Virus record (IMG/VR): IMGVR_UViG_3300045970_000794
Span: 298,103 to 362,102 of that record
DNA: 64,000 nt
Strand: one strand, 5' to 3'
This document shows positions 36,465 through 62,640 of this stretch, in pieces. The notes under the pieces were generated by a model. The model was given only the letters and a program-made list of their open reading frames with translations. It made no database searches and had not been told where the DNA came from. The position numbers and the translations under genes were made by a program. Positions within the stretch are counted from its first letter, which is position 1; every line of letters starts with the position of its first letter.

Positions 36465-36570
36465 AATTATTTTAATTTAAAATGCAAAGATATAAAATTT
36501 ATATTAAAAAAACAAGTTTTTTATTGACTATTTTAAAAAAAAATACGTATTTTTGGTAAAAATCAAACGT

Positions 36571-37304: not shown

Positions 37305-37344
37305 CGATTTTTTTTAAATTAACTGATATTTATAATTAAATATT

Positions 37345-40486: not shown

Positions 40487-40582
40487 TATCTTTAAATTTT
40501 AATTTGATGCAAAGATAATACAATTTATTTAAAAAACCAAACTTTTTTACATAAAAAAAGCCCCATTATTTTGGGTCCTATC

Positions 40583-41460: not shown

Positions 41461-41865
41461 TTATTCGATATCAATATAAGTATCTGGTAATGTTATGAAA
41501 TCCCAGTACTTTGCAGCGTTTTCAGTCATTCGAGTGTATATTACTTTTTCTCTAATCCATTCACTGTATATAGTATGAGCTAACATTTTGTCCAATCCGA
41601 ATGTTTCACTTAATAATGCAGTAATTTTATCCGAATCAAAATATTTTGTTTTACTAGTATCAGAATCGTGTAAACCTAAATCATTCTTCTTGAAAATATA
41701 AACCATCGAACCTTTTACCACAACATATGAATGCCGTTCAATCAGTCGAACCGCTTTATAATATAATTGAGCTGGGATGCCTAGACATTCCAACTCAATA
41801 TATCTTTTTTTAATTAATAAATTTCGCTCATCTTGTTTCATTATTCTTGGTAATGAACAGCCCAA
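41461..41865 (-). CDS. hypothetical protein
   Basis: 134-aa ORF. Confidence 0.6.
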   Translation of the reverse strand: MGCSLPRIMKQDERNLLIKKRYIELECLGIPAQLYYKAVRLIERHSYVVVKGSMVYIFKKNDLGLHDSDTSKTKYFDSDKITALLSETFGLDKMLAHTIYSEWIREKVIYTRMTENAAKYWDFITLPDTYIDIE

Positions 41866-42716: not shown

Positions 42717-42798
42717 AATTATTTCGTTTTAATATTTAGTTCTCTATTTAGGTCTCGTTTTTTAATTGTGTTATAAACTAATGAATATAGCGTCAAGA

Positions 42799-45308: not shown

Positions 45309-47234
45309 TTAATTATATTTAGATAATTCGAACGCCCTTCTATCCAAAGAAACGCTCTTAACTTTAACCATTATCTCATCACCGAGTTTTAATTTATACC
45401 CACTACTACCAACAACGCAATAGTTTGATACATCTGATGTGAATTGTTCATCGGGAATGATATCACCCAATCTCATCAATCCCTCACATTTAGAATCAGC
45501 TAATTCAACAAATACACCGCTTTCAATTATACCAGTTACCACACCCATGAATATCTTACCAACTTTATCAGCCATATATTCAGTTTGTTTGTATTTAATT
45601 GATTCACGTTCGGCTTTCTGAGCTTTACGTTCTCTTTCAGATAAGTGAGAACATTTACCTTCTAATCGATTACCATTAACATTAAACTTGCTATCTAAGT
45701 ACCTAGTTAATAATCTATGTACCATTATGTCTGGATAACGTCTAATTGGTGATGTGAAATGACAATAATCTTGAAACCCTAAACCATAGTGACCAACATT
45801 ATGTGTTGTGTAGGTTGCTTTAGACATTGTACGAACGATTAATCGGTTAACCATATTTTCCAATGGTTTACCCTCAAGCTCTTTAATTATTTTTTTAAAA
45901 CTAGCTTTAGTATCAGCTGGGTTTTTAGTATTAACTTTTAAATCGAATTGAGCTAAGAATGTTTTTAATTCTTCAATCTTTTCATCATCTGGTAACTCAT
46001 GAGCTCTGTTCACCATCGGTAAACCATTCAATCTAGCGTATTCAGCTACTTTTCTATTAGCTAATAACATATATTCCTCAATCAAATTATTAGAATCCAA
46101 TGATTCCTTCACAATAATTTTAACTGGTTTCTTGTTTTCATCTAATTCGAATTTAAAGCTAGGGCTTTTCATTTCAATAGCACCTTTACTTATTCTAATA
46201 GCTCTCATTTTCTTAGCTAAATCATTTAGTATTACTAAATAATCACCTAAGAATGCACCTGATGGGTCACTAATAAATCTATTATCATCGCCACGGTCAA
46301 TACATTCTTGTGCGCTTTCATATGTAAACCTATGTCTAGAACATATTACAGTTCTACCCATCCAAGTGTTCATAATTTTAGCATCCTTATTCATTGTCAC
46401 AACCACTGAGAAACATAACCTATCTTCAAATGGTTTCAAAGAACAAATGTCATTCGACAAATATTCTGGAATCATTGGTATCACTCTATCAACTAGATAG
46501 ATTGATGTACCACGTGAATATGCCTCAGCATCGATAGATGTTTCTGGTCTTACGTAGTGAGACACATCAGCAATATGAATACCAATTTCATAACAACCCA
46601 TATCAACTTCTCTGAATGATAATGCATCATCAAAGTCTTTAGCATCAACAGGGTCAATCGTGAATGTAGGTACTTTACGGAAATCTCTTCTCTTTTTAAT
46701 TTCACGTTCAGTTATCTCTCTACTGATACCTTCAGCTTCGTCCAATACATCTTGTGGGAATTCGGTTGGTAAACCATATTCTTGGATAATTGCATGCATT
46801 TCAACATCATTATCACCAGCATCACCTAACACTTCAACAATCTTACCTAATGGACATTTATCTTGTGGTCTCCACTCGATTAATTCAGCAATAACTTTCT
46901 GACCATTTGTGGCTCCATTTAAGCGTGTTAGAGGCACGTAAAAGTCAACTGATAGTTTTCTATTATCTGGACGAAAAAATGCGAAATTATCGCTTATATC
47001 AATCCTACCGACAAATTTATCTTTGTATCTCTTAACAACTTTTATAACTTTAGCTTCTAGAGGTCTATCTTGAGACTCTATAACTTTTATTTCAACCGTA
47101 TCTAAATGTAACGCTTGATTAATATTTTCTTTTTGAACATAAAGGTCCTTAGCCATTTCATCCGATTGGAAATATGCTGACCCACTTAAATTCAATGTAA
47201 TTTTACCTTTATAGGTATCCCCTACTTTTATCAT
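45309..47234 (-). CDS. rnr: ribonuclease R
   Basis: FTIDPVDAKDFDDALS, HIADVSHYV, IEEYMLLAN, HFTSPIRRYPD, C-terminal S1. Confidence 0.95.
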   Translation of the reverse strand: MIKVGDTYKGKITLNLSGSAYFQSDEMAKDLYVQKENINQALHLDTVEIKVIESQDRPLEAKVIKVVKRYKDKFVGRIDISDNFAFFRPDNRKLSVDFYVPLTRLNGATNGQKVIAELIEWRPQDKCPLGKIVEVLGDAGDNDVEMHAIIQEYGLPTEFPQDVLDEAEGISREITEREIKKRRDFRKVPTFTIDPVDAKDFDDALSFREVDMGCYEIGIHIADVSHYVRPETSIDAEAYSRGTSIYLVDRVIPMIPEYLSNDICSLKPFEDRLCFSVVVTMNKDAKIMNTWMGRTVICSRHRFTYESAQECIDRGDDNRFISDPSGAFLGDYLVILNDLAKKMRAIRISKGAIEMKSPSFKFELDENKKPVKIIVKESLDSNNLIEEYMLLANRKVAEYARLNGLPMVNRAHELPDDEKIEELKTFLAQFDLKVNTKNPADTKASFKKIIKELEGKPLENMVNRLIVRTMSKATYTTHNVGHYGLGFQDYCHFTSPIRRYPDIMVHRLLTRYLDSKFNVNGNRLEGKCSHLSERERKAQKAERESIKYKQTEYMADKVGKIFMGVVTGIIESGVFVELADSKCEGLMRLGDIIPDEQFTSDVSNYCVVGSSGYKLKLGDEIMVKVKSVSLDRRAFELSKYN

Positions 47235-47285
47235 ACTTTTTTTTTTATTTTAATTCCATTGTTTACCTGATGGTTTTTCAACTGT

Positions 47286-49653: not shown

Positions 49654-49757
49654 AATTTAAAACATTAAAAATTTAAGTACCATTAATTCGTTTAATAGCA
49701 CTTTTGCAAAGATACATATATTTATTTAATATAACAAGTATTTTTAAACTTATTTTT

Positions 49758-50540
49758 ATGAAAATTTTTAGTCAAGAAGAAATTAATGAAATTATTAGAT
49801 TATACACTATTGATATGTTAGGTACACCAACGATTGGTAAAAAGTTTAATATCAGTAAAAGAACCATCAATAATTTATTAAATAAAAATAATATTATTAT
49901 TGGTAAATCTGGTGGTAAATTTAAGGGTGGTAAAAAAATATCTGATAAAAAATATCGTGAAAAAAATAAAGAAAAAGCTAAAAAATACCAAGAAAACTAT
50001 CACCCTATATATTATCAAGAAAACAAAGAAATGCTAATTGATAAACATAAAACATATCGTGAAAATAATAAAGAAAAAGAGCAAATACGACATAAAATAT
50101 ATCGTGAAAATAATGCAGATAAAATTAAAATATATCGAATTTCGTATAAAGAAATTAGAAATTTAAAACATATTGAAAAAATGAAAATAAACCCACTTTA
50201 TAAATTAAAACATAATATTCGAGGTTTAATAAAAAATGGATTTAAAAGTAAATATTATATTAAACAATCTAAAACACAAGATATTTTAGGTTGTTCGTTT
50301 GAAGAATTTAAACTACATCTTGAATCACAATTTGAAAATTGGATGAACTGGGATAATTTTGGTAACTCTATTGATGGTATTATTGAACCAAATAAAACTT
50401 GGGATATTGACCATATTATTCCAATATCTTTAGCTAAAACAGAGGAAGATATAATTAAATTAAACCATTTCACTAATTTACAGCCGCTATGTAGTTATGA
50501 AAATCGTTTCATTAAACGAAATAAATTACTAAAAACATAA
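49758..50540 (+). CDS. HNH endonuclease
   Basis: ILGCS.EE.K.HLE.QF, WDIDHIIP, LNHFTNLQPL. Confidence 0.85.
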   Translation: MKIFSQEEINEIIRLYTIDMLGTPTIGKKFNISKRTINNLLNKNNIIIGKSGGKFKGGKKISDKKYREKNKEKAKKYQENYHPIYYQENKEMLIDKHKTYRENNKEKEQIRHKIYRENNADKIKIYRISYKEIRNLKHIEKMKINPLYKLKHNIRGLIKNGFKSKYYIKQSKTQDILGCSFEEFKLHLESQFENWMNWDNFGNSIDGIIEPNKTWDIDHIIPISLAKTEEDIIKLNHFTNLQPLCSYENRFIKRNKLLKT

Positions 50541-50912: not shown

Positions 50913-51311
50913 CTAATCTAATTCTAAATGACTAGTTATTTTATCAATTTCATCAGCCCAAAATGGACCAATTCCAACGCAAGTATTTGTTGGATTACCT
51001 TTAAATTCAGTCAACCCAGCATCAGTGATTAAAATTGATGGGATTTTAGCTGATTGTGCGGCCGCATAAATGCTTAATAGTTCAGCTTCATCTTTACATT
51101 TAACAACAATTTTAGTGAATCGGCCATTTAACCAATTGTCCCAAGCACCACCTTTTTTAAGATGTAATATGAATTTACATGGGTCAAGTGTGCGCATAGC
51201 ATTAACTAATACCGCAACTGAAGCATGGGCAACTTGTGCACCATATTTACCACGTCTAACCTTTAAATCATTCCTCCAAACTAAAACCATTTTTGTTTTC
51301 CTATTTTCCAT
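50913..51311 (-). CDS. pth2: peptidyl-tRNA hydrolase, Pth2 family
   Basis: R.DL...GK..AQVAHA, KIVVK, DAGLTE, TCVGIGP, ID.IT..L. Confidence 0.92.
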   Translation of the reverse strand: MENRKTKMVLVWRNDLKVRRGKYGAQVAHASVAVLVNAMRTLDPCKFILHLKKGGAWDNWLNGRFTKIVVKCKDEAELLSIYAAAQSAKIPSILITDAGLTEFKGNPTNTCVGIGPFWADEIDKITSHLELD

Positions 51312-51318
51312 AATAAAA

Positions 51319-52146
51319 TTAAGATTTATATGTTTGATTATCTTTTAAAATTCGTCTTATCAAATAAATACTAATATTAAACATTTCAGATAATTGTTTA
51401 GTAACTTTAAAACCATTATTTTTATATTCACTAATAATTTCGTTAATGACTGCATTATCAAATTCAACATAATTTGGATTCCCACTTTTCAATTTACTAT
51501 TTGACATTAAAATTCTACCATTTTCAGTAATATCAGTACGCTTACCATTAATATCTAATCTTTTTTTACAACTAGAACTAATTAATTTTTTAAATGAATC
51601 AGTTTTATAATAACTATTTTCTGATTGTTTTTTTTTAATTTCATTAGCTTTAATTTCACCATATCTTTCAACATAATTTAATTTTAATTGCTCAATCATT
51701 TTATTTGCTTTTTCTTCACCCCAACGCTCAACAAGTGTTTTATCTTTTTGAAAATCAGATAATTTTTTACGCTGTTCATTAGTAAGTGGCTTGCGAATTT
51801 GTTCTTTTGATTTTTCACCAATAATTCGTTTAGTTTCTTCACTATGCTTCCAGCCACTACAACCATGACCACCTTTAGTTGAATTATATCCTTCACCAAT
51901 AAAAGTATTGTATTTTTCAATATAATAAATTTCTAAATAATTTAAATCATCAACCGATACAACCCCCTCCAATACTTCCCATTCAAAATTATCAGGTCCA
52001 TATTTTTTAATTGCACGATGAAAATGATATTTTGACCCACGCAATGCATTTTTAATGTGTTGATTTTTACGCTCTTCTAATGTTTTAATGGTCTGACCAA
52101 TATATTTCAATCCATTAATTTTGTTTGTTACTAAATAAATTACCAT
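51319..52146 (-). CDS. GIY-YIG homing endonuclease with NUMOD3-like motif
   Basis: VIY..TN..NG.KYIGQT, GYN.T.GG, HSEETKR.I. Confidence 0.88.
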   Translation of the reverse strand: MVIYLVTNKINGLKYIGQTIKTLEERKNQHIKNALRGSKYHFHRAIKKYGPDNFEWEVLEGVVSVDDLNYLEIYYIEKYNTFIGEGYNSTKGGHGCSGWKHSEETKRIIGEKSKEQIRKPLTNEQRKKLSDFQKDKTLVERWGEEKANKMIEQLKLNYVERYGEIKANEIKKKQSENSYYKTDSFKKLISSSCKKRLDINGKRTDITENGRILMSNSKLKSGNPNYVEFDNAVINEIISEYKNNGFKVTKQLSEMFNISIYLIRRILKDNQTYKS

Positions 52147-52229: not shown

Positions 52230-52745
52230 TTATTTAAAATAAATATCTTTATATAAATCGATAAAATAATTCCCAATATAATAAGCCAAATCTTCACTTT
52301 TTAAATAAAGGGCCGAGGGAACAATCATATCACTAATATTGTAATCAGTGCTATAACAGGAAAACACACCGCTATTTTTATTAAAATAAGCGAAATATTT
52401 CATTTGAGAGTCATTATCCCAATCTGGATACCAGCCTTCATTTAATGCTTCGATAATTATACTTAATTTATAATAAGCAATTAAATGTTTATCTTTAAGC
52501 AATTTTAAGTCAATTGGTATTATATTAAGTTTAATACAAGCATCTTCAAACGAAGTAACACCCAATTTTTCACCAAAAATATATAAATTAGCTTTTATTA
52601 TTTTATTTCGTTCATTTAAATCGCCAACGCCTAAAATATCAAATATTTCATCTGAGTTTTTAATTGATATATAACTGAACTTTTCTTTAATTGTGGTAAT
52701 CCACCCATCAAAAGTTTGGTGTGGATTATAAAAATCTGGTTTCAT
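52230..52745 (-). CDS. DGR target protein 2
   Basis: Contains VR2; paralog of 53885-54436 (SFEDAC..L, ALNEGWYPD). Confidence 0.9.
   Translation of the reverse strand: MKPDFYNPHQTFDGWITTIKEKFSYISIKNSDEIFDILGVGDLNERNKIIKANLYIFGEKLGVTSFEDACIKLNIIPIDLKLLKDKHLIAYYKLSIIIEALNEGWYPDWDNDSQMKYFAYFNKNSGVFSCYSTDYNISDMIVPSALYLKSEDLAYYIGNYFIDLYKDIYFK
52312..52373 (-). repeat. DGR variable repeat VR2
   Basis: 8 differences from TR, all at TR adenines. Confidence 0.93.
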
Positions 52746-53691
52746 TTATATGTTTTTTAAGTAAATGTTTTCCGTTACAATGTTTAATCCAACCATTATA
52801 TGATGCAAATGACTTTTTATTAGGATTATTTTTCATCATCCGAATGAAATTTATTTTAATACCTTTTCGTAATAATATATGGGTATGATAAAATTTATAC
52901 CCAACAAAATCAACACCTCTATCTTTAACTGGAAATATCTGATAATTAGATTTTATTTTTAATAATAGTTTAGATTCAATATACCACTTAATATCACCTA
53001 ATAATTTATGTAATTCACTTTTACTAGATGAGAATATTACCATATCATCAGCATATCTAAAATAATATTTAACTAATTTTTCTTCTTTTAACCAATGGTC
53101 AAAATATGTTAAATATAAATTAGCAAAATACTGACTAGTATAATTACCTATTGGTAGACCATCCGTTGAATCAATAATCTCATCTAATAACCATAATAAA
53201 TCACTATCTTTTATTTTTCGTCTAATTATTGATTTTAGTATATCATGACTAATACTAGGATAAAATTTACTAATATCTAATTTTAAACAATATTCAGTAT
53301 TTTCAATATCTTTTAATGATTTTTTAACCGCATTAGCGGCACCATGTATTCCCCTACCTTTTATGCAACTATAAGTGTTACTAGTAAATATATTTACAAA
53401 TATCGGTTCCAAAATATTCATAATCGCATGATGGATAATTCTATCTGGATAATATGGTAAGGAAAAAATTAAACGTTCTTTACCCTCATTTATAATAAAG
53501 GTTTTATATTTAGATGTTTTAAATGTTTTATTAATTAATGATTCATGTAATCTTAAAATATTTAAATTTCTATCTTTATCAAATGAAATAACATCACATC
53601 TATTTTTCTTACCTTTTCTAGCTTTAGAATCAGCCAATTCTAAATTTTCAATAGATATTATTTTATCATATAAATTATTAAATCGTTTCAT
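52726..53691 (-). CDS. DGR reverse transcriptase
   Basis: KLDISKFYPSI, GLPIGNYTSQYFAN, RYADD; start MKRFNNLY at 53691. Confidence 0.95.
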   Translation of the reverse strand: MKRFNNLYDKIISIENLELADSKARKGKKNRCDVISFDKDRNLNILRLHESLINKTFKTSKYKTFIINEGKERLIFSLPYYPDRIIHHAIMNILEPIFVNIFTSNTYSCIKGRGIHGAANAVKKSLKDIENTEYCLKLDISKFYPSISHDILKSIIRRKIKDSDLLWLLDEIIDSTDGLPIGNYTSQYFANLYLTYFDHWLKEEKLVKYYFRYADDMVIFSSSKSELHKLLGDIKWYIESKLLLKIKSNYQIFPVKDRGVDFVGYKFYHTHILLRKGIKINFIRMMKNNPNKKSFASYNGWIKHCNGKHLLKKHINETRFL

Positions 53692-53803
53692 CCCTTTGTT
53701 ATTAATAGTTACGGTCTCTAATGATACTAGCACCTATTTAAAATTTAAATTTTTTACCATGTTGGTAAGGTTTATGTTATTAAGTAAGATTTAATAACAA
53801 GTT

Positions 53804-53865
53804 GCTGAGGGAACATTCATATTACTATTATTGTAATTAGTGTTATAATATGAAAACACACCGCT
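53804..53865 (-). ncRNA. DGR template repeat (TR)
   Basis: Intergenic AAY-rich copy: AGCGGTGTGTTTTCATATTATAACACTAATTACAATAATAGTAATATGAATGTTCCCTCAGC. Confidence 0.93.
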
Positions 53866-53884
53866 AATAACATAAACCAGAATT

Positions 53885-54436
53885 TTACATATAAAGTATC
53901 TCATACTCTCTAAGCGCAATTTTAATAGCATGTTTAGCTAATCCTTCGCTTTTTAAATAAAGGGCCGAGGGAACATTCATATTACTAATATTGAAATAAG
54001 TGTAATAATATGAAAACACACCGCTTTTAATTTCAAACCAATTATAATATTTATAATCATTTTTAGTAAAATCTGGATACCAACCTTCATTTAATGCTTT
54101 AATAATCGTTTTTAATTTTTTATATGCAATATCATTTGGTGTATCATATTGTAAACTAAATACTCCGTTCTGGTCTACATTAAGAACATTACAAGCATCC
54201 TCAAATGACTTAACTCGCTCAATAATGTTTTTTTCTTGTTTGAAAAACTTAGATAAAACAATTTTTTGTTTCTCATCTGATGCTGCAAACATTTCATTTA
54301 CTTCATTCTCAGTGAATTCAATGAACTCATCAAAATGATTCCGACTAGCATATTCTTCCAATTTTTTTTTCCAACTAAAACATGCAATGTCATGTATTAA
54401 TTTTAAATTTTTTCTAGATATTTGTTGTGTTTTCAT
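53885..54436 (-). CDS. DGR target protein 1
   Basis: Contains VR1; first gene after promoter at 54459. Confidence 0.9.
   Translation of the reverse strand: MKTQQISRKNLKLIHDIACFSWKKKLEEYASRNHFDEFIEFTENEVNEMFAASDEKQKIVLSKFFKQEKNIIERVKSFEDACNVLNVDQNGVFSLQYDTPNDIAYKKLKTIIKALNEGWYPDFTKNDYKYYNWFEIKSGVFSYYYTYFNISNMNVPSALYLKSEGLAKHAIKIALREYEILYM
53964..54025 (-). repeat. DGR variable repeat VR1
   Basis: 5 differences from TR, all at TR adenines. Confidence 0.93.
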
Positions 54437-54501
54437 AATTTAATTATTTAATTTAATGCAAAGATATAAAAAATATTTTAATCTACCAAATAAAAATACA
54501 A

Positions 54502-55020
54502 CTATTTTTTTGGTATTGGTTTAAGCATAATAATTAATCTAGTACCTTCAAAAACTGGGGTTTTTTCAGCGATACAAACACCAGAGAGTTCATTAATCAC
54601 TTTCTCTAATATTTGATACCCGAATTCTTTATGAGACATTTCACGGCCTTTAAAAAAGACTGAGGTTTTAACTAAATTACCTTTAATTAACCACTCCTTA
54701 GCATGTTTAAGTTTAAAATTTAAATCATTCTCATCGATAGCTGGTCTTAATCTTAATTCTTTAACCTCAACCTTAACTGGTTTCTTCTCAGCTTTTTTCT
54801 TTTCGTAAATATATTTTTCAAAATCAACTACTTTACAGATTGAGATTTCTGGATTATTAGCATTTATTTCTAATAAATCTAGGTCTAGGTCATCAGCAAT
54901 TTTAATAGCTTCTTGAAGTGAGTAAATACCCACAGTTACATTATCACCAACAAGTCTAACTTGTTTAGCTCTAATATCGGAATTGATTTTATACCGATTA
55001 AATTTATTTTTTTCTTTCAT
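54502..55020 (-). CDS. infC: translation initiation factor IF-3
   Basis: IN..IRA..VRLVG, A...DLDL.EI, VKELRLRP.IDE.D..FK, FFKGRE. Confidence 0.93.
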   Translation of the reverse strand: MKEKNKFNRYKINSDIRAKQVRLVGDNVTVGIYSLQEAIKIADDLDLDLLEINANNPEISICKVVDFEKYIYEKKKAEKKPVKVEVKELRLRPAIDENDLNFKLKHAKEWLIKGNLVKTSVFFKGREMSHKEFGYQILEKVINELSGVCIAEKTPVFEGTRLIIMLKPIPKK

Positions 55021-55137: not shown

Positions 55138-55308
55138 ATGGAAAAAAATAGGCAGCGGTCACGTAAAAATGATGAAAATAAAACAGATTCAATGACAATT
55201 AGAATTGAACCTAAATTAAAAGAGCAATATTTGAAATTTTGTGAAGATAATGGATATTCATATGGAAAACGGTTGAGATTATTAATTAAAAAAGATTTAG
55301 ATAAATGA
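55138..55308 (+). CDS. small ribbon-helix-helix protein (56 aa, not in ORF track)
   Basis: MTIRIEPKLKEQY..FC..NG.S...RLR.LI; ATGA overlap with next gene. Confidence 0.65.
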   Translation: MEKNRQRSRKNDENKTDSMTIRIEPKLKEQYLKFCEDNGYSYGKRLRLLIKKDLDK

Positions 55309-56177
55309 GTAAAAAATTAACAATTGATGAGATAATTAATAAAATTATTGATAATGATTACGATTTTTCACAATCAAATTATGTATCATTAGATAAAAAA
55401 ATAATCGTAATTGATATTGACGGGTTTGAGCATTTAATAAGACCAGATAGTTTATTAGTTGGAAATAAATTAAATATTAAAAGTGTTATCAATAAAGAAA
55501 ATTATTTAATTAAAAAATTTAATAAAATTCACAAAAATTTATTTGATTATTCTAAATTCACATATATAAATTCTGACACTAAAATTGATATCATATGTCA
55601 GACCCACGGTATTTTTAAACAAACTATTAATAATCATTTAAGAGGTAAAGGATGTCCTAAATGTAATGGTAAAAATAAAAGTAATAATGATATTATCAAT
55701 GAGTTTAAATCAACTCATGGTAATAAATACAATTATTCAAAAGTAACATATAGTGGGATTAAAAATAAAGTAATTATTATATGTCCAAAACATGGTGAAT
55801 TTAAACAATCACCAGAGGAACATATTAAAGGTTGTGGATGTCCAATCTGTAAAGAATCTAATGGTGAACGTAAAATTAGGTTATTTTTAGAATCAAATAA
55901 TGTTTCATATATACCACAACATAAATTTAATGATTGTAAAAATATATTAAGTTTACCATTTGACTTCTATTTACCTGATTATAATACATGTATCGAATAT
56001 CAAGGTGAACAGCATTATAGACCTATCGAATATTTTGGTGGTATTAAACAATTCAATAAACAAATAATTAATGATAAAATAAAAATGGAATATTGCCAAA
56101 ACAACAATATTCCATTAATAATGATTAAATATGGTGAAAACATATTTGAAACATTAAAAAAATTTTCTAATATTTAA
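55305..56177 (+). CDS. putative homing endonuclease (DUF723-like repeats + nuclease domain)
   Basis: Same architecture as 37345-38439. Confidence 0.8.
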   Translation: MSKKLTIDEIINKIIDNDYDFSQSNYVSLDKKIIVIDIDGFEHLIRPDSLLVGNKLNIKSVINKENYLIKKFNKIHKNLFDYSKFTYINSDTKIDIICQTHGIFKQTINNHLRGKGCPKCNGKNKSNNDIINEFKSTHGNKYNYSKVTYSGIKNKVIIICPKHGEFKQSPEEHIKGCGCPICKESNGERKIRLFLESNNVSYIPQHKFNDCKNILSLPFDFYLPDYNTCIEYQGEQHYRPIEYFGGIKQFNKQIINDKIKMEYCQNNNIPLIMIKYGENIFETLKKFSNI

Positions 56178-57741
56178 ATGTTGTGAAATCGCCATTGGAA
56201 AATGTGATTAATTGAGCCTTACCATCTTGATGTATTATACAATGTGTTTGAGACCAACTACTTGGGCCTTCATTATACCCCACTCTAAGGTTTGTTGATG
56301 TTCCAACTTGTAGAACACCATCCTTTCTACCGCAACTATGGCTATGTCCAATAATCATCTTAGTATTTAATCTTCTAAATTGTTCTAATGAACCCCTAGA
56401 ACCATTAGCACCTACATCACCATGTTGAGCTAATTCCCATTTTTTAACTACATAACTATCTGAGCGATTTAACGTCTTAATTTTAGGGTAGTGTTTCTTA
56501 ATTATCCATGGAATTACACCATCTTTAGCTTCACCACTCAATATCGCAGCACTATATTGCATATATTCCAATGAATTTTTTGGGGTATTAGTTTTACGCC
56601 AATCGGTATTGATTAACCAACGGTCAACAAAATCATCATGGTTACTTCTAACAATAACAACATTATAGTTTTTGAATTTATCTAATTCGACTAACATTTC
56701 ATCAACTTCGTTTTTCAATGAATTTTTATTATTCATTTCTTTCTCATATTGAGTGAATGGGTTATCCATTTCATGATGATTAATTGAATGACCATTGAAT
56801 ATATCATGCATAATAACATGTTGTGGCTTTAATCTATTCAATAATTCTAACGTTTTTTCAATAACTTCATTGTCTTGGTCACCAACATGGTAATCACCCA
56901 AAACTATAGCGGCCGCTGAATCAATCGTTGTAACTTCACCTTTATCAACTCTATAAAATAAATCAGTAAAAGCACCAGCTTCATTGGCAGTTACCTGTCT
57001 TGCAAAAAATATTTCATCATCTTTTATTTCAACCACTACAAACCCGTATGTATGATGAAACTCACCCTTTTTACCAGCTTTAGAATCAGTGTAATCCTTA
57101 ATGGTGACAGCACCAGTGGTCATCATCATTTTAGGCTTTTGCGTATGTAACACAGGAATTGACATCATTTGCACTTTAGGTGCACCAAAAATACAAGAAT
57201 TAATACCTGACACACCTTCTAACCCAGACATTGGATTTACAGCTGTTGGTTGAATCTTAAAATCACCCATAATAGAAACGTACTTATGAACATTATGTCT
57301 AGCCGCATCTAAATATGGTAGGACTTCTTTTTCCCAATACTCATAATCTTTATCTGTGAAGATTGATGTTGGGTTTTTGTATCTACCAGCGATGATGTGG
57401 ATATCCGCATCTAAAAACTCAGCATATGCTTCCATATTTCTTAAAAGCCTTGTATGCACAGCGGTATTATTCTGGGCCCAACTAATAAGGAATCTTTTCT
57501 TTTCTTTATTAAAAACTCGCTGTTTAGCAAGTTCATATTGTTCTGAAGGTGTTTCAGTTACTTTTTCTTTAAAATGTAATCGTTCAAACCATTTTCGAAT
57601 AGTTCGTTCCGATACACCTAATTGAAGACCCAAATTAAATGCAATTTTTTCAACAGTTAAATTTGAATCTTTCCGACCATAATAAGCGTTTTTTAATGTT
57701 ATCTTATCTTGTTCAGTTAATTTTTTAAAACTTTTTTTCAT
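56167..57741 (-). CDS. metallophosphoesterase with N-terminal HTH
   Basis: GDYH, HD, SNHD, HGD, GHSH; VSERTIRKW. Confidence 0.8.
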   Translation of the reverse strand: MKKSFKKLTEQDKITLKNAYYGRKDSNLTVEKIAFNLGLQLGVSERTIRKWFERLHFKEKVTETPSEQYELAKQRVFNKEKKRFLISWAQNNTAVHTRLLRNMEAYAEFLDADIHIIAGRYKNPTSIFTDKDYEYWEKEVLPYLDAARHNVHKYVSIMGDFKIQPTAVNPMSGLEGVSGINSCIFGAPKVQMMSIPVLHTQKPKMMMTTGAVTIKDYTDSKAGKKGEFHHTYGFVVVEIKDDEIFFARQVTANEAGAFTDLFYRVDKGEVTTIDSAAAIVLGDYHVGDQDNEVIEKTLELLNRLKPQHVIMHDIFNGHSINHHEMDNPFTQYEKEMNNKNSLKNEVDEMLVELDKFKNYNVVIVRSNHDDFVDRWLINTDWRKTNTPKNSLEYMQYSAAILSGEAKDGVIPWIIKKHYPKIKTLNRSDSYVVKKWELAQHGDVGANGSRGSLEQFRRLNTKMIIGHSHSCGRKDGVLQVGTSTNLRVGYNEGPSSWSQTHCIIHQDGKAQLITFSNGDFTTFKY

Positions 57742-57742
57742 T

Positions 57743-58642
57743 TTAATTTTTTTTTAAAAGACTTATTATTTTATTAGGAATCTCATTATATTTAATTATA
57801 ATTAGATTTATATTATTTTTATCACAATATTTTTTTTTAATCACATCATTTAATTTAACATCAATTAAATACTTTTCACCACCAAAAAATTCAATTGGCT
57901 TATAATGTTGAATTCCGTTAAATTCGATGCATGTATTATAATCTGGTAAATAAAAATCAAATGGTAATGGTAGTTTATTTCTACATTCATTAAATTTATG
58001 TTGCGGAATGAATTTGATATTATTTTCCAATAATAGTAGTCGAATATTATTTTCACCTTTACTTTCTTTACAGATTGGACAACCAACACCTTTCAAATGA
58101 TTATGGGGCGTTTGGATAAATTCACCATGTTTAGGGCAAATAATTGTTATTTTGACATGTGATGTTATGTACTTAATTTTAGAATAGTCATATATTTCAC
58201 CATGAATTAACTTAGCTTTTTCAATAAAACACTTATTACCAACCCTTCTATTAAGAAAAGTACATTTTTCACAACGGCTACCTTTTAAATGATTATTTGG
58301 GGTTTGTTCAAACTCACCATGGGTGGGACATATTATTTTAATATTAGTGTTAAAATTAATATAATTAACCAATGAGTAATCATATTCATCACCATGAATT
58401 AACTTAGCTTTTTCGATAAAACACTTATTACCTAATCTCTGTTTTACATAACTACATTTTTTACATCCATCACCACTTAAATGAGCACTAGCCCTTTGAT
58501 TAAATATACCATGCTCTTTGCAAATAATATTCACATAATTTTTACTTTCAGTATAATTAACTAATGAATAATCATATTTTTCACCATGAATTAACTTAGC
58601 TTTTTCTATAAACTTTAAATTTTTTTCTAACATACTTACCAT
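57743..58642 (-). CDS. putative homing endonuclease (DUF723-like repeats + nuclease domain)
   Basis: FIEKAKLIHG..YDYS x3; FDFYLP...IEFNG.QH. Confidence 0.8.
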   Translation of the reverse strand: MVSMLEKNLKFIEKAKLIHGEKYDYSLVNYTESKNYVNIICKEHGIFNQRASAHLSGDGCKKCSYVKQRLGNKCFIEKAKLIHGDEYDYSLVNYINFNTNIKIICPTHGEFEQTPNNHLKGSRCEKCTFLNRRVGNKCFIEKAKLIHGEIYDYSKIKYITSHVKITIICPKHGEFIQTPHNHLKGVGCPICKESKGENNIRLLLLENNIKFIPQHKFNECRNKLPLPFDFYLPDYNTCIEFNGIQHYKPIEFFGGEKYLIDVKLNDVIKKKYCDKNNINLIIIKYNEIPNKIISLLKKN

Positions 58643-58666
58643 TTTATTATAAATATCCAGTAAAAC

Positions 58667-58891: not shown

Positions 58892-59932
58892 TTACCCCTT
58901 ACCCTTCAAATCCTCAATACTATAGTTGTTGTTGATAGCTATCAACGCTTTTGCGATATGTTTCGATACGCTAACAACTTCAATTTTTTCTTTTCCTCGT
59001 TGTTCATCAAGATTGATATCATGCTCCATACTAGTAAATGATGCTAAATCATAATTCAATGAATCACTAACAATCAGTTTTTCTAGTTTAGAATTACCAA
59101 TATTGTAATAAGCTTTTCCCGATAATACGCCATGAGTAGCAATCGCTCTAACTGATGCACCACCTTCATCAATGATAAGGTCAGCCGCTTTACATAAAGT
59201 ACCAGCAGTATCAACTATATCATCAACAAGAATAACATGTTTTTCAGCAACATTACCAATAAGAACCATATCATCAATTTCATTGGCTTTAACTCTGGTT
59301 TTGTCAATAACAACATAACCCATTTGTATGGCGAACTTTTCTTTTAATAAATCTCGTAAGTATTTAACTCTTTTAGATGCACCAGCATCTGGAGCACATA
59401 GAACCCATTCTTTACCAGATTTATCTTCTTTTACCATTTCAGCAATGTGATGAGCAAATAAGTATCGACCTTCAATATGTGTTAATGGTATCTTGAAAAA
59501 TCCTTGAATCTGGTCCGCATGTAATTCAAACGTAACTACAGCATCAGCACCACGATTTTCAATCATTTCGGCGATTACCTTAGCACCAATTGGTGCTCTA
59601 GCTCTATCCTTTTTATCTTGACGAGCATATGGGAAATATGGTAATATAACAATAATCTCTTTAGCAGATGCTCTTCTAACAGCATCAATGGCTAGATTAA
59701 GAGCCATTATTTTATCGGATGAATTTGGTGATGTCATTATGTACACCCTAGCACCACGAACACTATCTTTAATATCAACAATTAACTCGCCATCAGAGAA
59801 CTTCTTAACATAAATCCCACCCTTAGTTAATGTACTACTGGTCGAATATTTCTTACATTGAGTTTGGAACTCAGTAATAACATTGAAAACTAAATCTTCT
59901 CTTTGGTCAACGGATAATAAAATTGATTTCAT
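58892..59932 (-). CDS. prs: ribose-phosphate pyrophosphokinase
   Basis: FSDGE, PYFPYARQDKK, ELHADQIQGFF, APDAG, LVDDIVDTAGT, ATHG. Confidence 0.95.
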   Translation of the reverse strand: MKSILLSVDQREDLVFNVITEFQTQCKKYSTSSTLTKGGIYVKKFSDGELIVDIKDSVRGARVYIMTSPNSSDKIMALNLAIDAVRRASAKEIIVILPYFPYARQDKKDRARAPIGAKVIAEMIENRGADAVVTFELHADQIQGFFKIPLTHIEGRYLFAHHIAEMVKEDKSGKEWVLCAPDAGASKRVKYLRDLLKEKFAIQMGYVVIDKTRVKANEIDDMVLIGNVAEKHVILVDDIVDTAGTLCKAADLIIDEGGASVRAIATHGVLSGKAYYNIGNSKLEKLIVSDSLNYDLASFTSMEHDINLDEQRGKEKIEVVSVSKHIAKALIAINNNYSIEDLKGKG

Positions 59933-60175
59933 ATTATTGTTATTTTTTGCAAAGATAGTAATAATTTTTTAATAAAACAACATTTTTTCAATTTTTATCA
60001 CATTAAAATCAATTACTTATACAATTATCACTAAATGGTTTCATAAGTTATTGAAACATAATTAATTACGTTTTGTAAAATTAAAAGATGTTTATGTATG
60101 GGCGTGAAAATGAATATTTATTATTGTAAACATTACATTACAAAATAAAATATAATACAAAAAAAAATTAAAATT

Positions 60176-61462
60176 ATGGCACAATTTATTAAAATTGAAT
60201 GGGATGCAAGTCCATCACCAATTTCGGGATATAATGTATATCGTGGTGGTGCTGACGGCAATGAATCAAATGTACCACTTAATACTTCACCAATTACGGA
60301 TACATTTTATGACGACTATACAATATTTCCTGGTAAGGTATATTGCTATACCGTTACAGCTGTTTTAAACGGTGTGGAAAGTACCAACTCACTAAAAATT
60401 TATACTGAGCCAATTGGATTTATTAATTCACCAGCACAATTAGATTTAGGTGCTTTCGCTGGATTTGGTTTGCTAGCAGCGACTACAATTACTAACGTTC
60501 CTGGAACTGGAACCACATCAGACGTAACTGGTGATGTTGGTGTATTTCCAGGTTCATCAATCACTGGTTTTGAATCAGTTAGAATTTCTGGTTCATACCA
60601 TTTAGCTGATTATGTAGCTGGTTATGCACAAAGTTCATTAACAAATACGTTTCTTACTGGTATGGCATTAACTGGTGCAACCTCAGTTCCAGCCGATTTG
60701 GGTGGCCTTGTTTTAATACCAGGAATTTATTCAGCCGCTACTTCAGCTGCCATTACTGGCGTTTTAGTATTGAATGCTGAAGGTAATCCAGATGCTGTTT
60801 GGGTTTTCCAAATAGGTTCAACATTAACTACTGCTGCTGGCAATAGCACTGTTGTCCTAGTTGGTGGTGCTCAAGCAACAAACGTTACTTGGTTAGTCGG
60901 TTCTTCAGCAACTATGGGTGTTGATACAATTTTCGCTGGTAATGTTATTGCATATGCATCAATCACAGTAAATACTAACGCATCTGTTTGCGGAAGATTA
61001 GGTGCTAGAACAGCTGCAATTACATTAGATAAAAATGCTATTATTATTTACGGTTCTTGTTATGAGCCTTTGCCAGCATCGCCAGCAAATACACCACCAG
61101 AACCACCAAGTGCACCAACAGGTGTTCACGTTGATGATTTAAATGCTGATGGTTTAGTTAATAATATTCCAATATTACCAATTGTTACAACGTCAGTTAT
61201 TAGTATGTTGTCAGAAACTTCCGCAAATGGTGGTGGTAACATAACACATGATGGTTATGATGTTATTATCGCACGTGGAGTTTGTTGGAGTACTAACATC
61301 AATCCATTATTAACTGGAAGCCATACAATTGATGGTTCGGGTGTTGGTGTATTCACATCTTTAATTGCAAATTTATTACCATTCACAACGTATTATGTTA
61401 GAGCTTACGCTGTAAACTCTGCTGGTACTGCTTATGGTGATAACGTAATGTTCATCAATTAA
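60176..61462 (+). CDS. ice-binding-like (DUF3494) protein flanked by FN3-like domains
   Basis: TGDVGV.PG.SITGF, DLGGL.L.PGIY, GNPDAVWVFQIGSTLTTA, GAQATNV.W.VGSSAT; FN3 GYNVYR and TTYYVRAYA. Confidence 0.88.
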   Translation: MAQFIKIEWDASPSPISGYNVYRGGADGNESNVPLNTSPITDTFYDDYTIFPGKVYCYTVTAVLNGVESTNSLKIYTEPIGFINSPAQLDLGAFAGFGLLAATTITNVPGTGTTSDVTGDVGVFPGSSITGFESVRISGSYHLADYVAGYAQSSLTNTFLTGMALTGATSVPADLGGLVLIPGIYSAATSAAITGVLVLNAEGNPDAVWVFQIGSTLTTAAGNSTVVLVGGAQATNVTWLVGSSATMGVDTIFAGNVIAYASITVNTNASVCGRLGARTAAITLDKNAIIIYGSCYEPLPASPANTPPEPPSAPTGVHVDDLNADGLVNNIPILPIVTTSVISMLSETSANGGGNITHDGYDVIIARGVCWSTNINPLLTGSHTIDGSGVGVFTSLIANLLPFTTYYVRAYAVNSAGTAYGDNVMFIN

Positions 61463-61475
61463 AATAATAATGAAT

Positions 61476-61500
61476 TCCCACAAAGGTTATCTTTGTGGGA
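61476..61500 (+). terminator. stem-loop between the two DUF3494 genes
   Basis: TCCCACAAAG-gttat-CTTTGTGGGA; no strong U tract. Confidence 0.5.
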
Positions 61501-61533
61501 GCTTATTAAATAAACATAAATAAACTTAAAATT

Positions 61534-62640
61534 ATGGCCTCAATATTTCAAAGATTAAAAATACCAACTTCAATTTCAACCGTATCAACAGGATTATTTA
61601 ATTCATTAATGGATTATTTTGATAAAGGTATAAGTGGTATATTTTTCACAACACCAATTCGTTATTCTACTAGCTATGGTATAACAGCAAATCCTAATGG
61701 TGGTCAAGCACATGCAACTAGATTGTTAAGTGAAATAAATAATGTAGATATAGTTTCAACAAACGGTGATAGTGTAAAATTAATGACTGCATTACCAGGT
61801 TATTCTATAACTGTAAAAAATAATGGATTAAAAAATTTATTAGTTTACCCATACGAATTGGATAAAATTGATGAAGAACTAGCTGACGTTCCAATAACAA
61901 TGCTACCAGAAGAAACAAGAGTCTTTAAATCAATTAGTGATTCTCGTTGGGAAAGTATGCCAAATAGTCTTCAAACTATTACCTACGTGTTGAGTGGTAA
62001 TTCATTGCCAACAACACCATCAGTTTATGACTTAAAATTAGCGTCTACTTTTGCCATTCTTACTGATGGTGCGATTACAATTAGTAATCCACAATTAATA
62101 ATACCTTATGGACGTTCTGGTGAAGCAAGTTTAACACCAACAACTGGTATAACATTTATCAATGGCTCTGATGCTGGATTAAGCGCTAGTGCTGTGACTG
62201 ATTCAAATACTTTATTTAATGAATTAGTTGTTTTGACTGGTTATACTTTCGGTGCAGTTAATTTAGAAACCGTGAATGTTGGATATGGTGCTGGTACATT
62301 TATGTCTGGCGTTTATATTGGCTCAACTAGTATAGTAACATCAGCCTCTCAAACTATAAAATTAGTTGGTGATGGTGATTATATTTTCATAAGTCAAGGT
62401 GCTATGACATTCGGTGCATCAACAACAATTGAACTAACACATGGTGCGCAAGCTAGTAGAGTATATTGGGTATCTGTAGGTGCTATTACTACTGGTGCAG
62501 TTAATATTCTTAAAGGAAACTTTATCACATCAGCTGCAATTAATATCGGAGCAACAAATGATATTGAAGGTAGACTATTATCAACATTAACCTCTGAAAT
62601 AACAATAGATGGTATAGCAACTAATATTTACTTACCATAA
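61534..62640 (+). CDS. protein with C-terminal DUF3494 ice-binding-like domain
   Basis: FAIL..GAI, F..GVY, YIF...GA.T, L..GAQASRVYW...GA.T, GRLLS. Confidence 0.75.
   Translation: MASIFQRLKIPTSISTVSTGLFNSLMDYFDKGISGIFFTTPIRYSTSYGITANPNGGQAHATRLLSEINNVDIVSTNGDSVKLMTALPGYSITVKNNGLKNLLVYPYELDKIDEELADVPITMLPEETRVFKSISDSRWESMPNSLQTITYVLSGNSLPTTPSVYDLKLASTFAILTDGAITISNPQLIIPYGRSGEASLTPTTGITFINGSDAGLSASAVTDSNTLFNELVVLTGYTFGAVNLETVNVGYGAGTFMSGVYIGSTSIVTSASQTIKLVGDGDYIFISQGAMTFGASTTIELTHGAQASRVYWVSVGAITTGAVNILKGNFITSAAINIGATNDIEGRLLSTLTSEITIDGIATNIYLP

What the first reader, a model, noticed from the sequence alone, without database searches (positions are those of the whole stretch)
52230..54436. Compact two-target diversity-generating retroelement
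Seen: order is promoter-target1(VR1)-TR-RT-target2(VR2). TR vs VR1 has 5 mismatches and TR vs VR2 has 8; all 13 fall at TR adenines. One (TCA>TCG) is shared by both VRs and may be an IMH/IMH* difference. TR has 21 A in 62 nt, including six AAY codons. Both VRs continue with CCTTTATTTAAAAAG(C/T)GAAG, which TR lacks (IMH-like). Established: adenine-specific mutagenic retrohoming as in the Bordetella phage BPP-1 DGR.
Basis: partly seen in the sequence, partly recalled or inferred. Interest (0 to 1): 0.85.

Follow-up and report, generated by a model that had tools for sequence, protein, structure and literature searches.

The report
Phage retroelement diversifying two small proteins
This is a real diversity-generating retroelement in a 362 kb phage that probably infects Bacteroidota; it rewrites a 20-codon patch in two small non-structural proteins of an already catalogued but uncharacterised family, whose predicted fold is unlike the lectin fold expected for such targets.

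Summary
On the minus strand the order is promoter, target A (VR-A), TR, structured spacer RNA, RT, target B (VR-B). The 62-nt TR differs from VR-A at 5 positions and from VR-B at 8, all at TR adenines. The RT is a DGR RT: its best solved relative is BPP-1 bRT (8e-43), it has the IGxxxSQ motif, and it is about 60% identical to crAss-like phage DGR RTs.

The cassette is not new in kind. The targets belong to PC_00007 ("Phage_other", DGR clade 1) of Roux et al. 2021. The TR-RT spacer is a divergent Rfam RT-17 motif. Lack of Avd is normal for this lineage. In 34 related loci, 589 of 599 TR/VR mismatches lie at TR adenines. Near-identical relatives differ only within VRs (8 of 8 and 20 of 20 differences), so the class is active. 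For this element, the three assemblies are identical, so current activity is untested.

The most interesting result is the target fold. An AlphaFold model (pLDDT 95.9) shows a helical scaffold carrying the VR on a beta-hairpin and loop. It has no PDB match and is neither C-type lectin nor Ig. The gene sits in an early-type region behind a host-type promoter. Target function is unknown.

Verdict: a new member of a known kind, of moderate interest.

The parts
54459..54490 (-). Bacteroidota-type promoter upstream of target A: -33 TTTG (54490..54487), 20-nt spacer, -7 TATCTTTG (54466..54459), 22 nt before the ATG
   Evidence: TATCTTTG occurs 18 times in the window against 4.4 expected (0 of 100 shuffles reach 18). 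At least 13 copies lie 17-35 nt upstream of an ORF start and share the extended TTTG-N~20-TATCTTTG-CA consensus. The copy here is nearly identical to those at 30343 and 11886. TAnnTTTG is the Bacteroides -7 consensus (PMC4747536). The sigma-70 scan is not above its shuffles.
53885..54436 (-). Target gene A, 183 aa, member of the PC_00007 / phrog_11581 family
   Evidence: ORF. phrog_11581 at 2.7e-18. 45 close homologs. 4,595 cluster representatives in the profile search. AF2 model with pLDDT 95.9.
53964..54025 (-). VR-A (codons 138-158 of target A)
   Evidence: 5 mismatches to the TR, all at TR adenines. It coincides with the hypervariable block of the family alignment.
53944..53963 (-). 3' flank of VR-A that is absent from the TR (candidate IMH continuation); encodes (A)LYLKSE
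   Evidence: Sequence comparison. Shared with VR-B at 19 of 20 nt. Not separable from protein constraint.
53804..53865 (-). Template repeat (TR), 62 nt, intergenic, beginning 20 nt after the target A stop. The 46-aa ORF 53931..53791 that covers it is just the TR read in the VR frame.
   Evidence: 21 adenines, 19 of them at codon positions 1-2. No stop codon is reachable. About 1.4e11 peptide variants are possible.
53694..53788 (-). Structured spacer RNA between TR and RT (a divergent RT-17-type motif). P1 hairpin 53768..53754, followed by an A-run. P2 is 53734..53730 paired with 53712..53708. UAGUA box 53729..53725. Small hairpin P3 53724..53717.
   Evidence: Rfam RT-17 at 25.1 bits and RT-14 at 28.3 bits; both are full-length but below the gathering score. 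The same spacer in six relatives passes the RT-17 gathering score at 40.8-57.7 bits. On 28 spacers, 89% of cells pair against 69% in shuffles, 10 of 11 pairs show compensatory changes, and slid controls give 32-48%.
52726..53691 (-). DGR reverse transcriptase, 321 aa, starting at ATG 53691. The GTG at 53733 listed by the ORF finder lies inside helix P2 of the spacer RNA.
   Evidence: RVT_1 at 9e-21. phrog_1423 at 4e-123. PDB 8ub7 (BPP-1 bRT) at 8e-43 over the full length, with IGNYTSQYFANLY aligned to IGSLTSQLFANVY and YADD present. Homologs start at residue 12-15. The JGI gene call is 321 aa.
52230..52745 (-). Target gene B, 171 aa, a paralog of target A (45% identity); its start overlaps the RT end by 20 nt
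   Evidence: phrog_11581 at 5e-18.
52312..52373 (-). VR-B
   Evidence: 8 mismatches to the TR, all at TR adenines.
52292..52311 (-). 3' flank of VR-B that is absent from the TR (candidate IMH continuation)

Best explanation
This is an accessory-gene-free (architecture A) diversity-generating retroelement of the crAss-related RT lineage (DGR clade 1). It is carried by a 362 kb phage whose promoters point to a Bacteroidota host.

How it works. A host-type promoter upstream of target A probably drives one transcript covering target A, TR, spacer, RT and target B. The TR and the structured RT-17-like spacer form the DGR RNA. [quoted passage not shown] The cDNA then replaces the VR in each of the two paralogous target genes. 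Direction is set by the fixed 3' boundary difference: TCG-GCC-CTT in the VRs against TCA-GCA-ACT in the TR.

What it produces. About 12 codons are diversified (residues 143-154, roughly 1e11 possible peptides). They lie on the second strand of a beta-hairpin and the following loop, displayed on a small helical protein of the PC_00007 family. This protein is most likely a non-structural, early-expressed ligand-binding protein used in phage-host conflict, not a tail fibre.

Shown: the anatomy, the adenine specificity, the RT family, the RNA covariation, and activity of the class in close relatives. Inferred: the single transcript, Avd-independent priming through the spacer RNA, current activity of this particular copy, and the cellular role of the targets.
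For: - Adenine specificity: 13 of 13 mismatches at TR adenines, with no change at other bases.
- RT identity: a full-length match to BPP-1 bRT with the DGR-typical GxxxSQ motif and YADD, and about 60% identity to crAss-like DGR RTs.
- Same cassette in other huge-phage contigs: L004 (540 kb) has 8 of 8 and L006 (352 kb) has 10 of 10 mismatches at adenines.
- Spread of the class: of 80 IMG/VR loci encoding the target family, 60 carry the related RT and 56 show adenine-specific TR/VR pairs. Pooled over 52 pairs, 589 of 599 mismatches are at adenines.
- Activity of the class: L016 and L017 differ at 8 positions in 8,549 nt, all in a VR and all at TR adenines. L036 and L038 differ at 20 positions in 8,789 nt, all in VRs, 19 of them at adenines.
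- Spacer RNA: covariation and RT-17 matches. The BPP-1 spacer holds the analogous RT-10 motif (PMC5737381).
- No Avd: none in the window or in related loci. This fits architecture A, which is 29% of DGRs (PMC5758913), and Avd-less crAss-like DGRs (PMC12386605).
- Non-structural context: IF3, PTH2, RNase R-like, sigma factor and endonuclease genes here. RecT, exonuclease, Ant, QueC-like and PNK-like genes in relatives. Labelled 'Phage_other' in PMC8144416.
- Promoter: host-type.
- Fold.
Against: - There are no population data for this element. The three assemblies that carry it are 100% identical over the cassette and probably come from one project. No variant VRs were found in the metagenome scan.
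- The window's spacer scores below the RT-17 gathering threshold (25 against 40.4 bits), and one of its five P2 positions is a mismatch.
- Avd-independence is inferred from absence, not shown.
- Target function has no direct evidence. There are no Pfam, NCBIfam or PADLOC hits and no annotated homolog.
- The single-transcript model rests only on the absence of another promoter copy or any terminator inside the cassette.
Confidence: 0.85

Rival explanations
1. The element is a DGR that is now inactive, and the VR/TR differences are historical.
For: The cassette is identical in all three assemblies that carry it. There are only 4 and 7 true substitutions among roughly 20 available adenines. The spacer RNA scores below the Rfam threshold. 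A 352 kb relative (L006) has its RT interrupted by an endonuclease-bearing insertion yet still shows 10 adenine mismatches, so adenine mismatches outlast RT integrity.
Against: The RT ORF is intact with its catalytic motifs. The TR has no non-adenine divergence from either VR, and drift after inactivation would add some. The P1, P2 and box elements of the spacer are kept. Close relatives are demonstrably active. The three assemblies are probably not independent populations, and consensus assembly hides minor variants.
Confidence: 0.25
2. The targets are virion receptor-binding or tail-accessory proteins, and the DGR switches host tropism as in BPP-1.
For: This is the classical role of phage DGRs. 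Sibling RTs in crAss-like phages diversify tail proteins, and the same RT OTU serves both PC_00002 tail targets and PC_00007. Two ice-binding-like/fn3 proteins lie 6 kb away.
Against: The targets are 171-183 aa, mostly helical, and have no signal peptide or tail-protein similarity. They lie among early, nucleic-acid and translation genes here and in small phages, behind a host-type promoter. Non-DGR homologs in LoVEphage sit among methylase and radical-SAM genes. Roux et al. class the cluster as non-structural.
Confidence: 0.2
3. The repeats are ordinary paralog homology or gene conversion, and the RT is an unrelated retron, group II intron or defence RT.
For: The two targets are paralogs (45% identity). 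The RT gives weak hits to group II, Drt and retron models.
Against: The third copy (TR) is non-coding and sits immediately upstream of the RT. 13 of 13 mismatches are at adenines of that copy only (joint chance about 2e-7). All non-DGR RT models score far below their cut-offs (124 against 300, 67 against 200, 64 against 235 bits), while bRT aligns over the full length. The same arrangement recurs in 56 loci.
Confidence: 0.01

Closest known systems
Bordetella phage BPP-1 DGR (mtd-avd-TR-brt)
   Same: Homologous RT (E 8e-43 to 4.6e-46 over the full length, GxxxSQ and YxDD motifs). A non-coding TR upstream of the RT. Adenine-specific TR-to-VR information flow. A fixed difference at the 3' boundary (IMH against IMH*). 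A structured RNA in the TR-RT spacer.
   Different: No Avd. The TR is 62 nt instead of 134. There are two targets flanking the RT instead of one upstream. The targets have no detectable similarity to Mtd and are not predicted as C-type lectin. The VR is internal, at about 75-86% of the protein, so the IMH is coding. The spacer RNA is of RT-17 type, not RT-10.
DGRs of crAss-like phages (for example Buchavirus cr52_1, Suoliviridae)
   Same: The closest annotated RTs, at 52-60% identity. No avd. The same spacer architecture: a CUUUACC...GGUAAAAAAU hairpin, a UAGUA box and a small hairpin. Bacteroidota hosts.
   Different: Their target is a 414-aa tail protein annotated as Mtd/sulfatase-like, with one VR of 85 nt. 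The genomes are about 100 kb, and some are stop-codon recoded.
DGR clade 1 with target cluster PC_00007 ('Phage_other') of Roux et al. 2021 (PMC8144416)
   Same: The same target family: the KALNEGW...PDW...KY motif, a hypervariable block, then a conserved closing motif and a C-terminal helix. Small proteins, often 2-3 per cassette. VR at 0.64-0.82 of the protein length. FCB (Bacteroidota) phages.
   Different: This copy is on a 362 kb phage. The targets flank the RT, whereas most relatives have tandem targets upstream; L015 and L016 share the flanking layout. The sub-branch closes the VR with VPSAL(Y/C)(L/F)K instead of the commoner VGSRLxFK.
Rfam RT-17 RNA motif (RF03020; Weinberg et al. 2017, PMC5737381)
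   Same: The same position immediately upstream of an RT gene and the same architecture. Six relatives pass the gathering score. My independently derived helices match the family consensus.
   Different: The window's copy scores 25.1 bits, below the gathering score of 40.4. The published description did not assign RT-17 to DGRs; only RT-10 was assigned, and the rest were speculated.
Non-structural second target of Quimbyvirus (Benler et al. 2021, PMC8008677)
   Same: A phage DGR target outside the structural module, among defence and counter-defence type genes.
   Different: That target carries a C-type lectin domain and belongs to a different protein family.
Ig1/Ig2 VR classes and architecture A of Wu et al. 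2018 (PMC5758913)
   Same: Small motif-less targets, internal VRs, avd-less lineages in Bacteroides relatives, and a TR-RT core. The RT OTU that Roux links to PC_00007 is Wu's entry t122.
   Different: I could not verify that PC_00007 equals Ig1 or Ig2, because no supplement is held. The predicted fold here is not Ig, as it has only one long beta-hairpin.

Membership tests
Diversity-generating retroelement (DGR) | RT of the DGR clade (GxxxSQ in motif 4, YxDD) | tested here: met
   Full-length match to BPP-1 bRT (8ub7) at 8e-43, with IGNYTSQ aligned to IGSLTSQ and YADD present. The next-best RT classes score 1e-20 or worse. phmmer with bRT gives 4.6e-46. All non-DGR NCBIfam RT models score below their cut-offs.
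Diversity-generating retroelement (DGR) | A TR/VR pair: a near-identical repeat with one copy non-coding next to the RT and the other inside an ORF | tested here: met
   The TR (53865..53804) is intergenic, 112 nt upstream of the RT start. VR-A and VR-B lie inside target ORFs.
Diversity-generating retroelement (DGR) | TR/VR mismatches confined to TR adenines | tested here: met
   13 of 13 in the window. 589 of 599 in 52 pairs from relatives.
Diversity-generating retroelement (DGR) | Asymmetric 3' boundary (IMH in the VR, IMH* in the TR) | tested here: met
   A fixed TCG (VR) against TCA (TR), followed by divergence, in all four VRs of three loci. An analogous fixed A/G difference occurs at the VR 3' ends of L036 and L038. 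Function of the boundary was not tested.
Diversity-generating retroelement (DGR) | Observed diversification of the VR between otherwise identical genomes | tested here: inconclusive
   For this element the three assemblies are identical. It is met for relatives: L016/L017 have 8 of 8 and L036/L038 have 20 of 20 differences inside VRs.
BPP-1-type DGR (architecture B: avd-TR-RT) | Avd accessory protein encoded in the cassette | tested here: not met
   phmmer --max with BPP-1 Avd against all 321 window ORFs of at least 50 aa gives a best E of 1.6. tblastn against all related loci finds nothing. No spare ORF is conserved within the cassette. A single-sequence query has limited sensitivity.
Canonical DGR variable proteins | The VR is displayed on a C-type lectin fold (or an Ig fold) | tested here: not met
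   An AF2 model (pLDDT 95.9, pTM 0.82) shows helices plus one beta-hairpin. Foldseek against 350,542 PDB chains gives a best E of 2.5 and TM of 0.25 or less, with no Mtd, TvpA or TaqVP hit. hhalign against Mtd gives probability 0.1%.
PC_00007 / phrog_11581 target family | Sequence membership, including the KALNEGW-PDW-KY core, the hypervariable block and the C-terminal helix | tested here: met
   phrog_11581 at 2.7e-18 and 5e-18. The profile search finds 4,595 representatives. The motifs occur in proteins that PMC8144416 lists as PC_00007.
Rfam RT-17 RNA (RF03020) | Score at or above the gathering threshold (40.4 bits) | tested here: not met
   The window copy scores 25.1 bits (E 0.0074 on 261 nt), though the match is full-length. 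Six homologous spacers in relatives pass at 40.8-57.7 bits, and the window's spacer aligns with them and keeps the covarying helices. It works like an RT-17 RNA and is a divergent relative by alignment.
Retron / group II intron / defence RT (DRT, UG) | A family-specific RT model above its cut-off, together with the associated ncRNA or effector | tested here: not met
   Group II 124 against 300 bits, Drt3a 67 against 200, retron St85 64 against 235. The best PADLOC hit is the generic RT model. No group II or retron RNA appears in the Rfam scan.

The most novel reading that the evidence does not exclude
The PC_00007 family is a third DGR display scaffold, neither C-type lectin nor Ig. It is a compact helical domain of about 115 residues that presents a hypervariable beta-hairpin and loop, with the IMH embedded in coding sequence. 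It is expressed early inside the infected cell, so these DGRs would diversify an intracellular binder (for example of host defence or takeover targets) and not a host-adsorption device. This runs against the published expectation that uncharacterised VR domains are further C-Lec variants (PMC8144416).
Probability: 0.35. Interest if true: 0.75.

Novelty: new member of a known kind. Interest (0 to 1): 0.45.

Why it matters
As a DGR, this locus is ordinary. Its value lies in the class it belongs to. PC_00007 was among the 24 most abundant DGR target clusters in the 2021 global survey, and a profile search here finds more than 4,500 sequence clusters for the family. Yet it has no Pfam model, no solved structure and no known function.

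The evidence here has three implications.
- The C-type lectin fold may not be the only scaffold DGRs use.
- One RT and spacer RNA module serves both tail fibres and these small proteins.
- Phage DGRs may diversify early, non-virion proteins, which opens the possibility of retroelement-driven counter-defence.

The work also ties the orphan Rfam motif RT-17 to a defined role as the TR-RT spacer of Avd-less DGRs. That gives a compact two-component system (a 321-aa RT plus about 180 nt of RNA) that could be tested for Avd-independent mutagenic reverse transcription.

Tried and rejected
- Stop-codon reassignment in the window: code 11 gives dense coding, so I found no sign of recoding here. No tRNAs are present.
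- Near-identical DNA in annotated phages: none.
- Pfam Pox_C4_C10 hit of target A (E 6e-4, below the cut-off): seen in 1 of 138 family members, so it is a chance hit.
- First AF2 model from 41 sequences: the VR stretch had pLDDT below 50 and looked like a disordered loop. It was superseded by the 138-sequence model.
- Fold searches: no PDB match with either model. BFVD returned only uncharacterised crAss-like and other phage proteins. The ESM Atlas returned only unnamed viral clusters.
- Sequence-level C-Lec control with the classical cr52_1 target: the CDS has two in-frame stops, so the pieces were searched apart. The C-terminal piece has no PDB or Pfam hit, so this control is uninformative.
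- Sigma-70 promoter and terminator scans: no better than shuffles, and no terminators. The generic TAnnTTTG count is not enriched; only the specific TATCTTTG is.
- VR variants of this element in other samples: none. Remote VRs on the 362 kb contig: none.
- Avd and Mtd homologs: none.
- Group I intron in the split RT of L006: no Rfam hit.
- Functional annotation through annotated phages, using two family members: only 'hypothetical protein'.
- Link to Wu et al.'s Ig1/Ig2 classes: no supplement is held, so it is unverified.
- DNA hairpin or cruciform downstream of the VRs (needed in BPP-1): inspected by eye only, nothing obvious seen, and not tested formally.
Full report
**1. What is in the sequence**

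Every component lies on the minus strand. Reading 5' to 3' on that strand, the parts are:

- A promoter, with -33 TTTG at 54490..54487 and -7 TATCTTTG at 54466..54459.
- Target gene A (54436..53885, 183 aa), which contains VR-A (54025..53964).
- After a 20-nt gap, the 62-nt template repeat (TR, 53865..53804).
- A 112-nt spacer.
- The RT gene (53691..52726, 321 aa).
- Target gene B (52745..52230, 171 aa), which overlaps the RT end by 20 nt and contains VR-B (52373..52312).

The ORF finder starts the RT at a GTG at 53733. Three things place the real start at the ATG at 53691: homologs begin at residue 12-15, the JGI gene call is 321 aa, and the GTG lies inside a conserved RNA helix (see section 4). 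The 46-aa ORF over the TR is simply the TR read in the VR frame.

**2. Check of the observation**

- The TR differs from VR-A at 5 positions and from VR-B at 8. All 13 are at TR adenines and no other base differs. The hypergeometric probabilities are 0.0031 and 6e-5.
- A pattern with N at every TR adenine matches exactly three sites in the window, against 0 expected. It matches only those three on the whole 362,102-bp contig, so there are no remote VRs.
- The TR has 21 adenines, 19 of them at codon positions 1-2, including six AAY codons. No stop codon can arise by adenine substitution. About 1.4e11 peptides are encodable per target.
After it, TR and VR diverge. It is therefore a fixed boundary (IMH/IMH*) difference. 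That leaves 4 and 7 mutagenic substitutions; one of them (AAT to ATT) is shared by both VRs.
- The 20 nt that both VRs share beyond the homology encodes the family-invariant ALYLKSE motif. Its conservation cannot be assigned to DNA or to protein from this window alone.

**3. The RT**

- It matches Pfam RVT_1 and PHROG 1423.
- Its best solved relative is the BPP-1 bRT (8ub7), at 8e-43 over the full length. IGNYTSQYFANLY aligns to IGSLTSQLFANVY and the YADD box is present. Retron-type and group II RTs follow at 1e-20 or worse.
- The BPP-1 bRT sequence finds only this ORF in the window, at 4.6e-46.
- NCBIfam models for group II, Drt and retron RTs all score far below their cut-offs. PADLOC's best hit is its generic RT model.
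- The nearest annotated relatives are RTs of crAss-like phages, at 52-60% identity.

**4. The spacer RNA**

I aligned 28 TR-end-to-RT-start segments from related loci. The alignment shows a hairpin P1 followed by an A-run, a 5-bp helix P2 with a central U-U, a YRGUA box, a hairpin P3 of variable length, a GAAM box, and GCAAAGG just before the start codon.

- RNAalifold recovers P1, with all four pairs covarying.
- For the hand-specified P1/P2/P3 structure, 89.3% of cells pair against 69.2% in shuffles (0 of 500 reach the observed value). Ten of 11 pairs show compensatory changes. Sliding the partners drops pairing to 32-48%.
- Rfam matches the window's spacer over the full length to RT-17 (25.1 bits) and RT-14 (28.3 bits). 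Both are below their gathering scores.
- The homologous spacers of six relatives pass the RT-17 threshold at 40.8-57.7 bits. The Rfam consensus has the same helices.
- Weinberg et al. placed RT-10 in the BPP-1 spacer and only speculated that other RT motifs belong to DGRs (PMC5737381). Here RT-17 is shown to occupy the TR-RT spacer of this DGR lineage.
- The crAss phage cr52_1, which has a classical tail-protein target and 20 of 20 adenine mismatches, carries the same spacer architecture. The RT and RNA module therefore serves different target scaffolds.

**5. No accessory gene**

- No ORF of at least 50 aa in the window resembles Avd (best E 1.6), and no related locus does either.
- Neighbouring genes are not conserved between the window, L004 and L006. 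The conserved unit is target(s), TR, spacer and RT.
- This is architecture A of Wu et al., which accounts for 29% of DGRs (PMC5758913). It is usual for crAss-like DGRs (PMC12386605).

**6. The targets**

- The two proteins are paralogs at 45% identity. Both match the function-unknown phrog_11581. Neither has a Pfam, NCBIfam or PADLOC hit.
- Forty-five close homologs were found, including ones on contigs of 540 kb and 352 kb.
- The family alignment has conserved flanks around a hypervariable block that coincides with the VR.
- An exhaustive profile search found 4,595 cluster representatives at E of 1e-3 or better. The core domain of about 115 residues occurs alone or in tandem. None of 138 members has a Pfam domain.
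- The family is already catalogued. Proteins with the same motifs are listed in the target set of Roux et al. 2021 as PC_00007, class 'Phage_other', DGR clade 1, with FCB hosts (PMC8144416). That paper states that annotated VR regions are systematically C-Lec and that uncharacterised ones are probably new C-Lec variants.

**7. Fold**

- With 41 sequences, AF2 left the VR at pLDDT below 50.
- With 138 diverse sequences, the model reaches pLDDT 95.9 and pTM 0.82. It has helices from residue 8 to 116, a beta-hairpin (129-137 and 140-149), a loop, and a C-terminal helix (164-182).
- The variable residues 143-154 map to the second strand and the following loop.
- Foldseek finds no PDB match (best E 2.5, TM 0.25 or less). 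hhalign against Mtd is null.
- The fold is therefore predicted to be neither C-type lectin nor Ig.
- Caveats: this is a prediction. The sequence-level control was uninformative.

**8. Is the class active?**

- Of 80 IMG/VR loci that encode the family, 60 carry a related RT (53-72% identity) and 56 have adenine-specific TR/VR pairs in family genes. The usual layout is two or three tandem targets upstream of TR-RT. The window's flanking layout recurs in L015 and L016.
- Pooled over 52 pairs, 589 of 599 mismatches are at TR adenines, against an adenine content of 27%.
- L016 and L017 differ at 8 positions in 8,549 nt, all in one VR and all at TR adenines. L036 and L038 differ at 20 positions in 8,789 nt, all in the two VRs and 19 at adenines. 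The class diversifies in nature.
- For this element, the three assemblies that carry it are identical, so current activity is undetermined.

**9. Context and likely role**

- The window is the last 64 kb of JGI contig Ga0485187_0000003 (362,102 bp).
- Nearby genes encode IF3, PTH2, an RNase R-like nuclease, sigma factors, a PRPP-synthetase-like enzyme, a C5 methylase, a T5 A1-like protein and several homing-endonuclease-like proteins.
- In smaller phages the cassette sits among RecT, exonuclease, Ant, PNK-like and QueC-like genes. Non-DGR homologs in LoVEphage lie among methylase and radical-SAM genes.
- The promoter upstream of target A belongs to a set of at least 13 near-identical TTTG-N~20-TATCTTTG promoters in the window. 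These match the Bacteroides -33/-7 consensus (PMC4747536).
- From this I infer a Bacteroidota host, early transcription by host RNA polymerase, and a non-virion role for the targets. The specific role, binding a variable host or competitor molecule, is speculation.

**10. Verdict**

In kind it is already known: clade 1 RT, PC_00007 targets, RT-17 spacer, architecture A. What this analysis adds:

- The huge-phage setting.
- The explicit link between RT-17 and DGRs.
- Direct evidence that the class is active.
- A high-confidence predicted fold that does not match the C-Lec paradigm.

Noticed in passing
window, 18 sites, e.g. 1135-1142(-), 2450-2457(-), 11886-11893(-), 26020-26027(-), 30343-30350(-), 36485-36492(-), 40510-40517(-), 54459-54466(-), 61488-61495(+): A recurrent phage promoter, TTTG-N~20-TATCTTTG-CA, occurs 18 times against 4.4 expected. 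At least 13 copies lie 17-35 nt upstream of an ORF start. It matches the Bacteroides -33/-7 consensus and so predicts a Bacteroidota host and a host-RNAP (early) regulon.
   Followed up: partly
window 54502-55020(-), 50913-51311(-), 45309-47249(-), 41841-42728(-), 58892-59968(-): The phage encodes translation and RNA-handling genes: IF3, peptidyl-tRNA hydrolase PTH2, an RNase R/II-like nuclease with CSD and S1 domains, a full sigma-70-family factor (regions 1.2-4) and a PRPP-synthetase-like enzyme. This set is typical of huge phages.
   Followed up: no
window 51319-52146(-), 55305-56177(+), 57743-58666(-), 37336-38439(+), 49704-50540(+): There is a high density of homing-endonuclease-like genes (GIY-YIG, DUF723/DUF4379 treble-clef, HNH-like), two of which directly flank the DGR neighbourhood.
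   Followed up: no
L006:6732-8029 (352 kb relative): The RT gene is split exactly between residues 89 and 90 by a 686-nt insertion that carries an Endonuclease_7 ORF, and the C-terminal third was not detected. The VR still shows 10 of 10 adenine mismatches. No group I intron was found by Rfam, so whether the insertion is spliced out or the RT is dead remains open. L013 also has a truncated RT match.
   Followed up: partly
L001:2543-3784 (crAss-like phage cr52_1): The annotated DGR target (tail protein) CDS contains two in-frame stop codons under code 11, consistent with stop-codon recoding in that phage. Its VR ends in ...VGSRL, the same motif that closes the VR in most PC_00007 proteins, which suggests an IMH-encoded motif shared across scaffolds.
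   Followed up: partly
window 60149-61462(+), 61510-62640(+): Two adjacent ice-binding-like (PF11999) proteins, the first also with an fn3 domain, may be surface or adhesion proteins of the phage.
   Followed up: no
window 56167-57741(-): A 524-aa protein matches phrog_1745 over its full length (E 6e-155). That family is annotated 'DNA transfer protein'; from memory this is the family of the T5 pre-early protein A1, which I did not check. If so, it fits an early-gene region.
   Followed up: no
window 18601-19587(-), 12543-13475(-): A C5 cytosine DNA methylase, and a cation-efflux (CDF) family transporter, which is an unusual auxiliary gene for a phage.
   Followed up: no
window 54001-54003 and 52349-52351 (codon 150 of target A and the equivalent codon in target B): Both VRs carry the same AAT-to-ATT (Asn to Ile) change relative to the TR. 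This could reflect selection for a hydrophobic residue at that hairpin position, conversion between the VRs, or a later T-to-A change in the TR.
   Followed up: no
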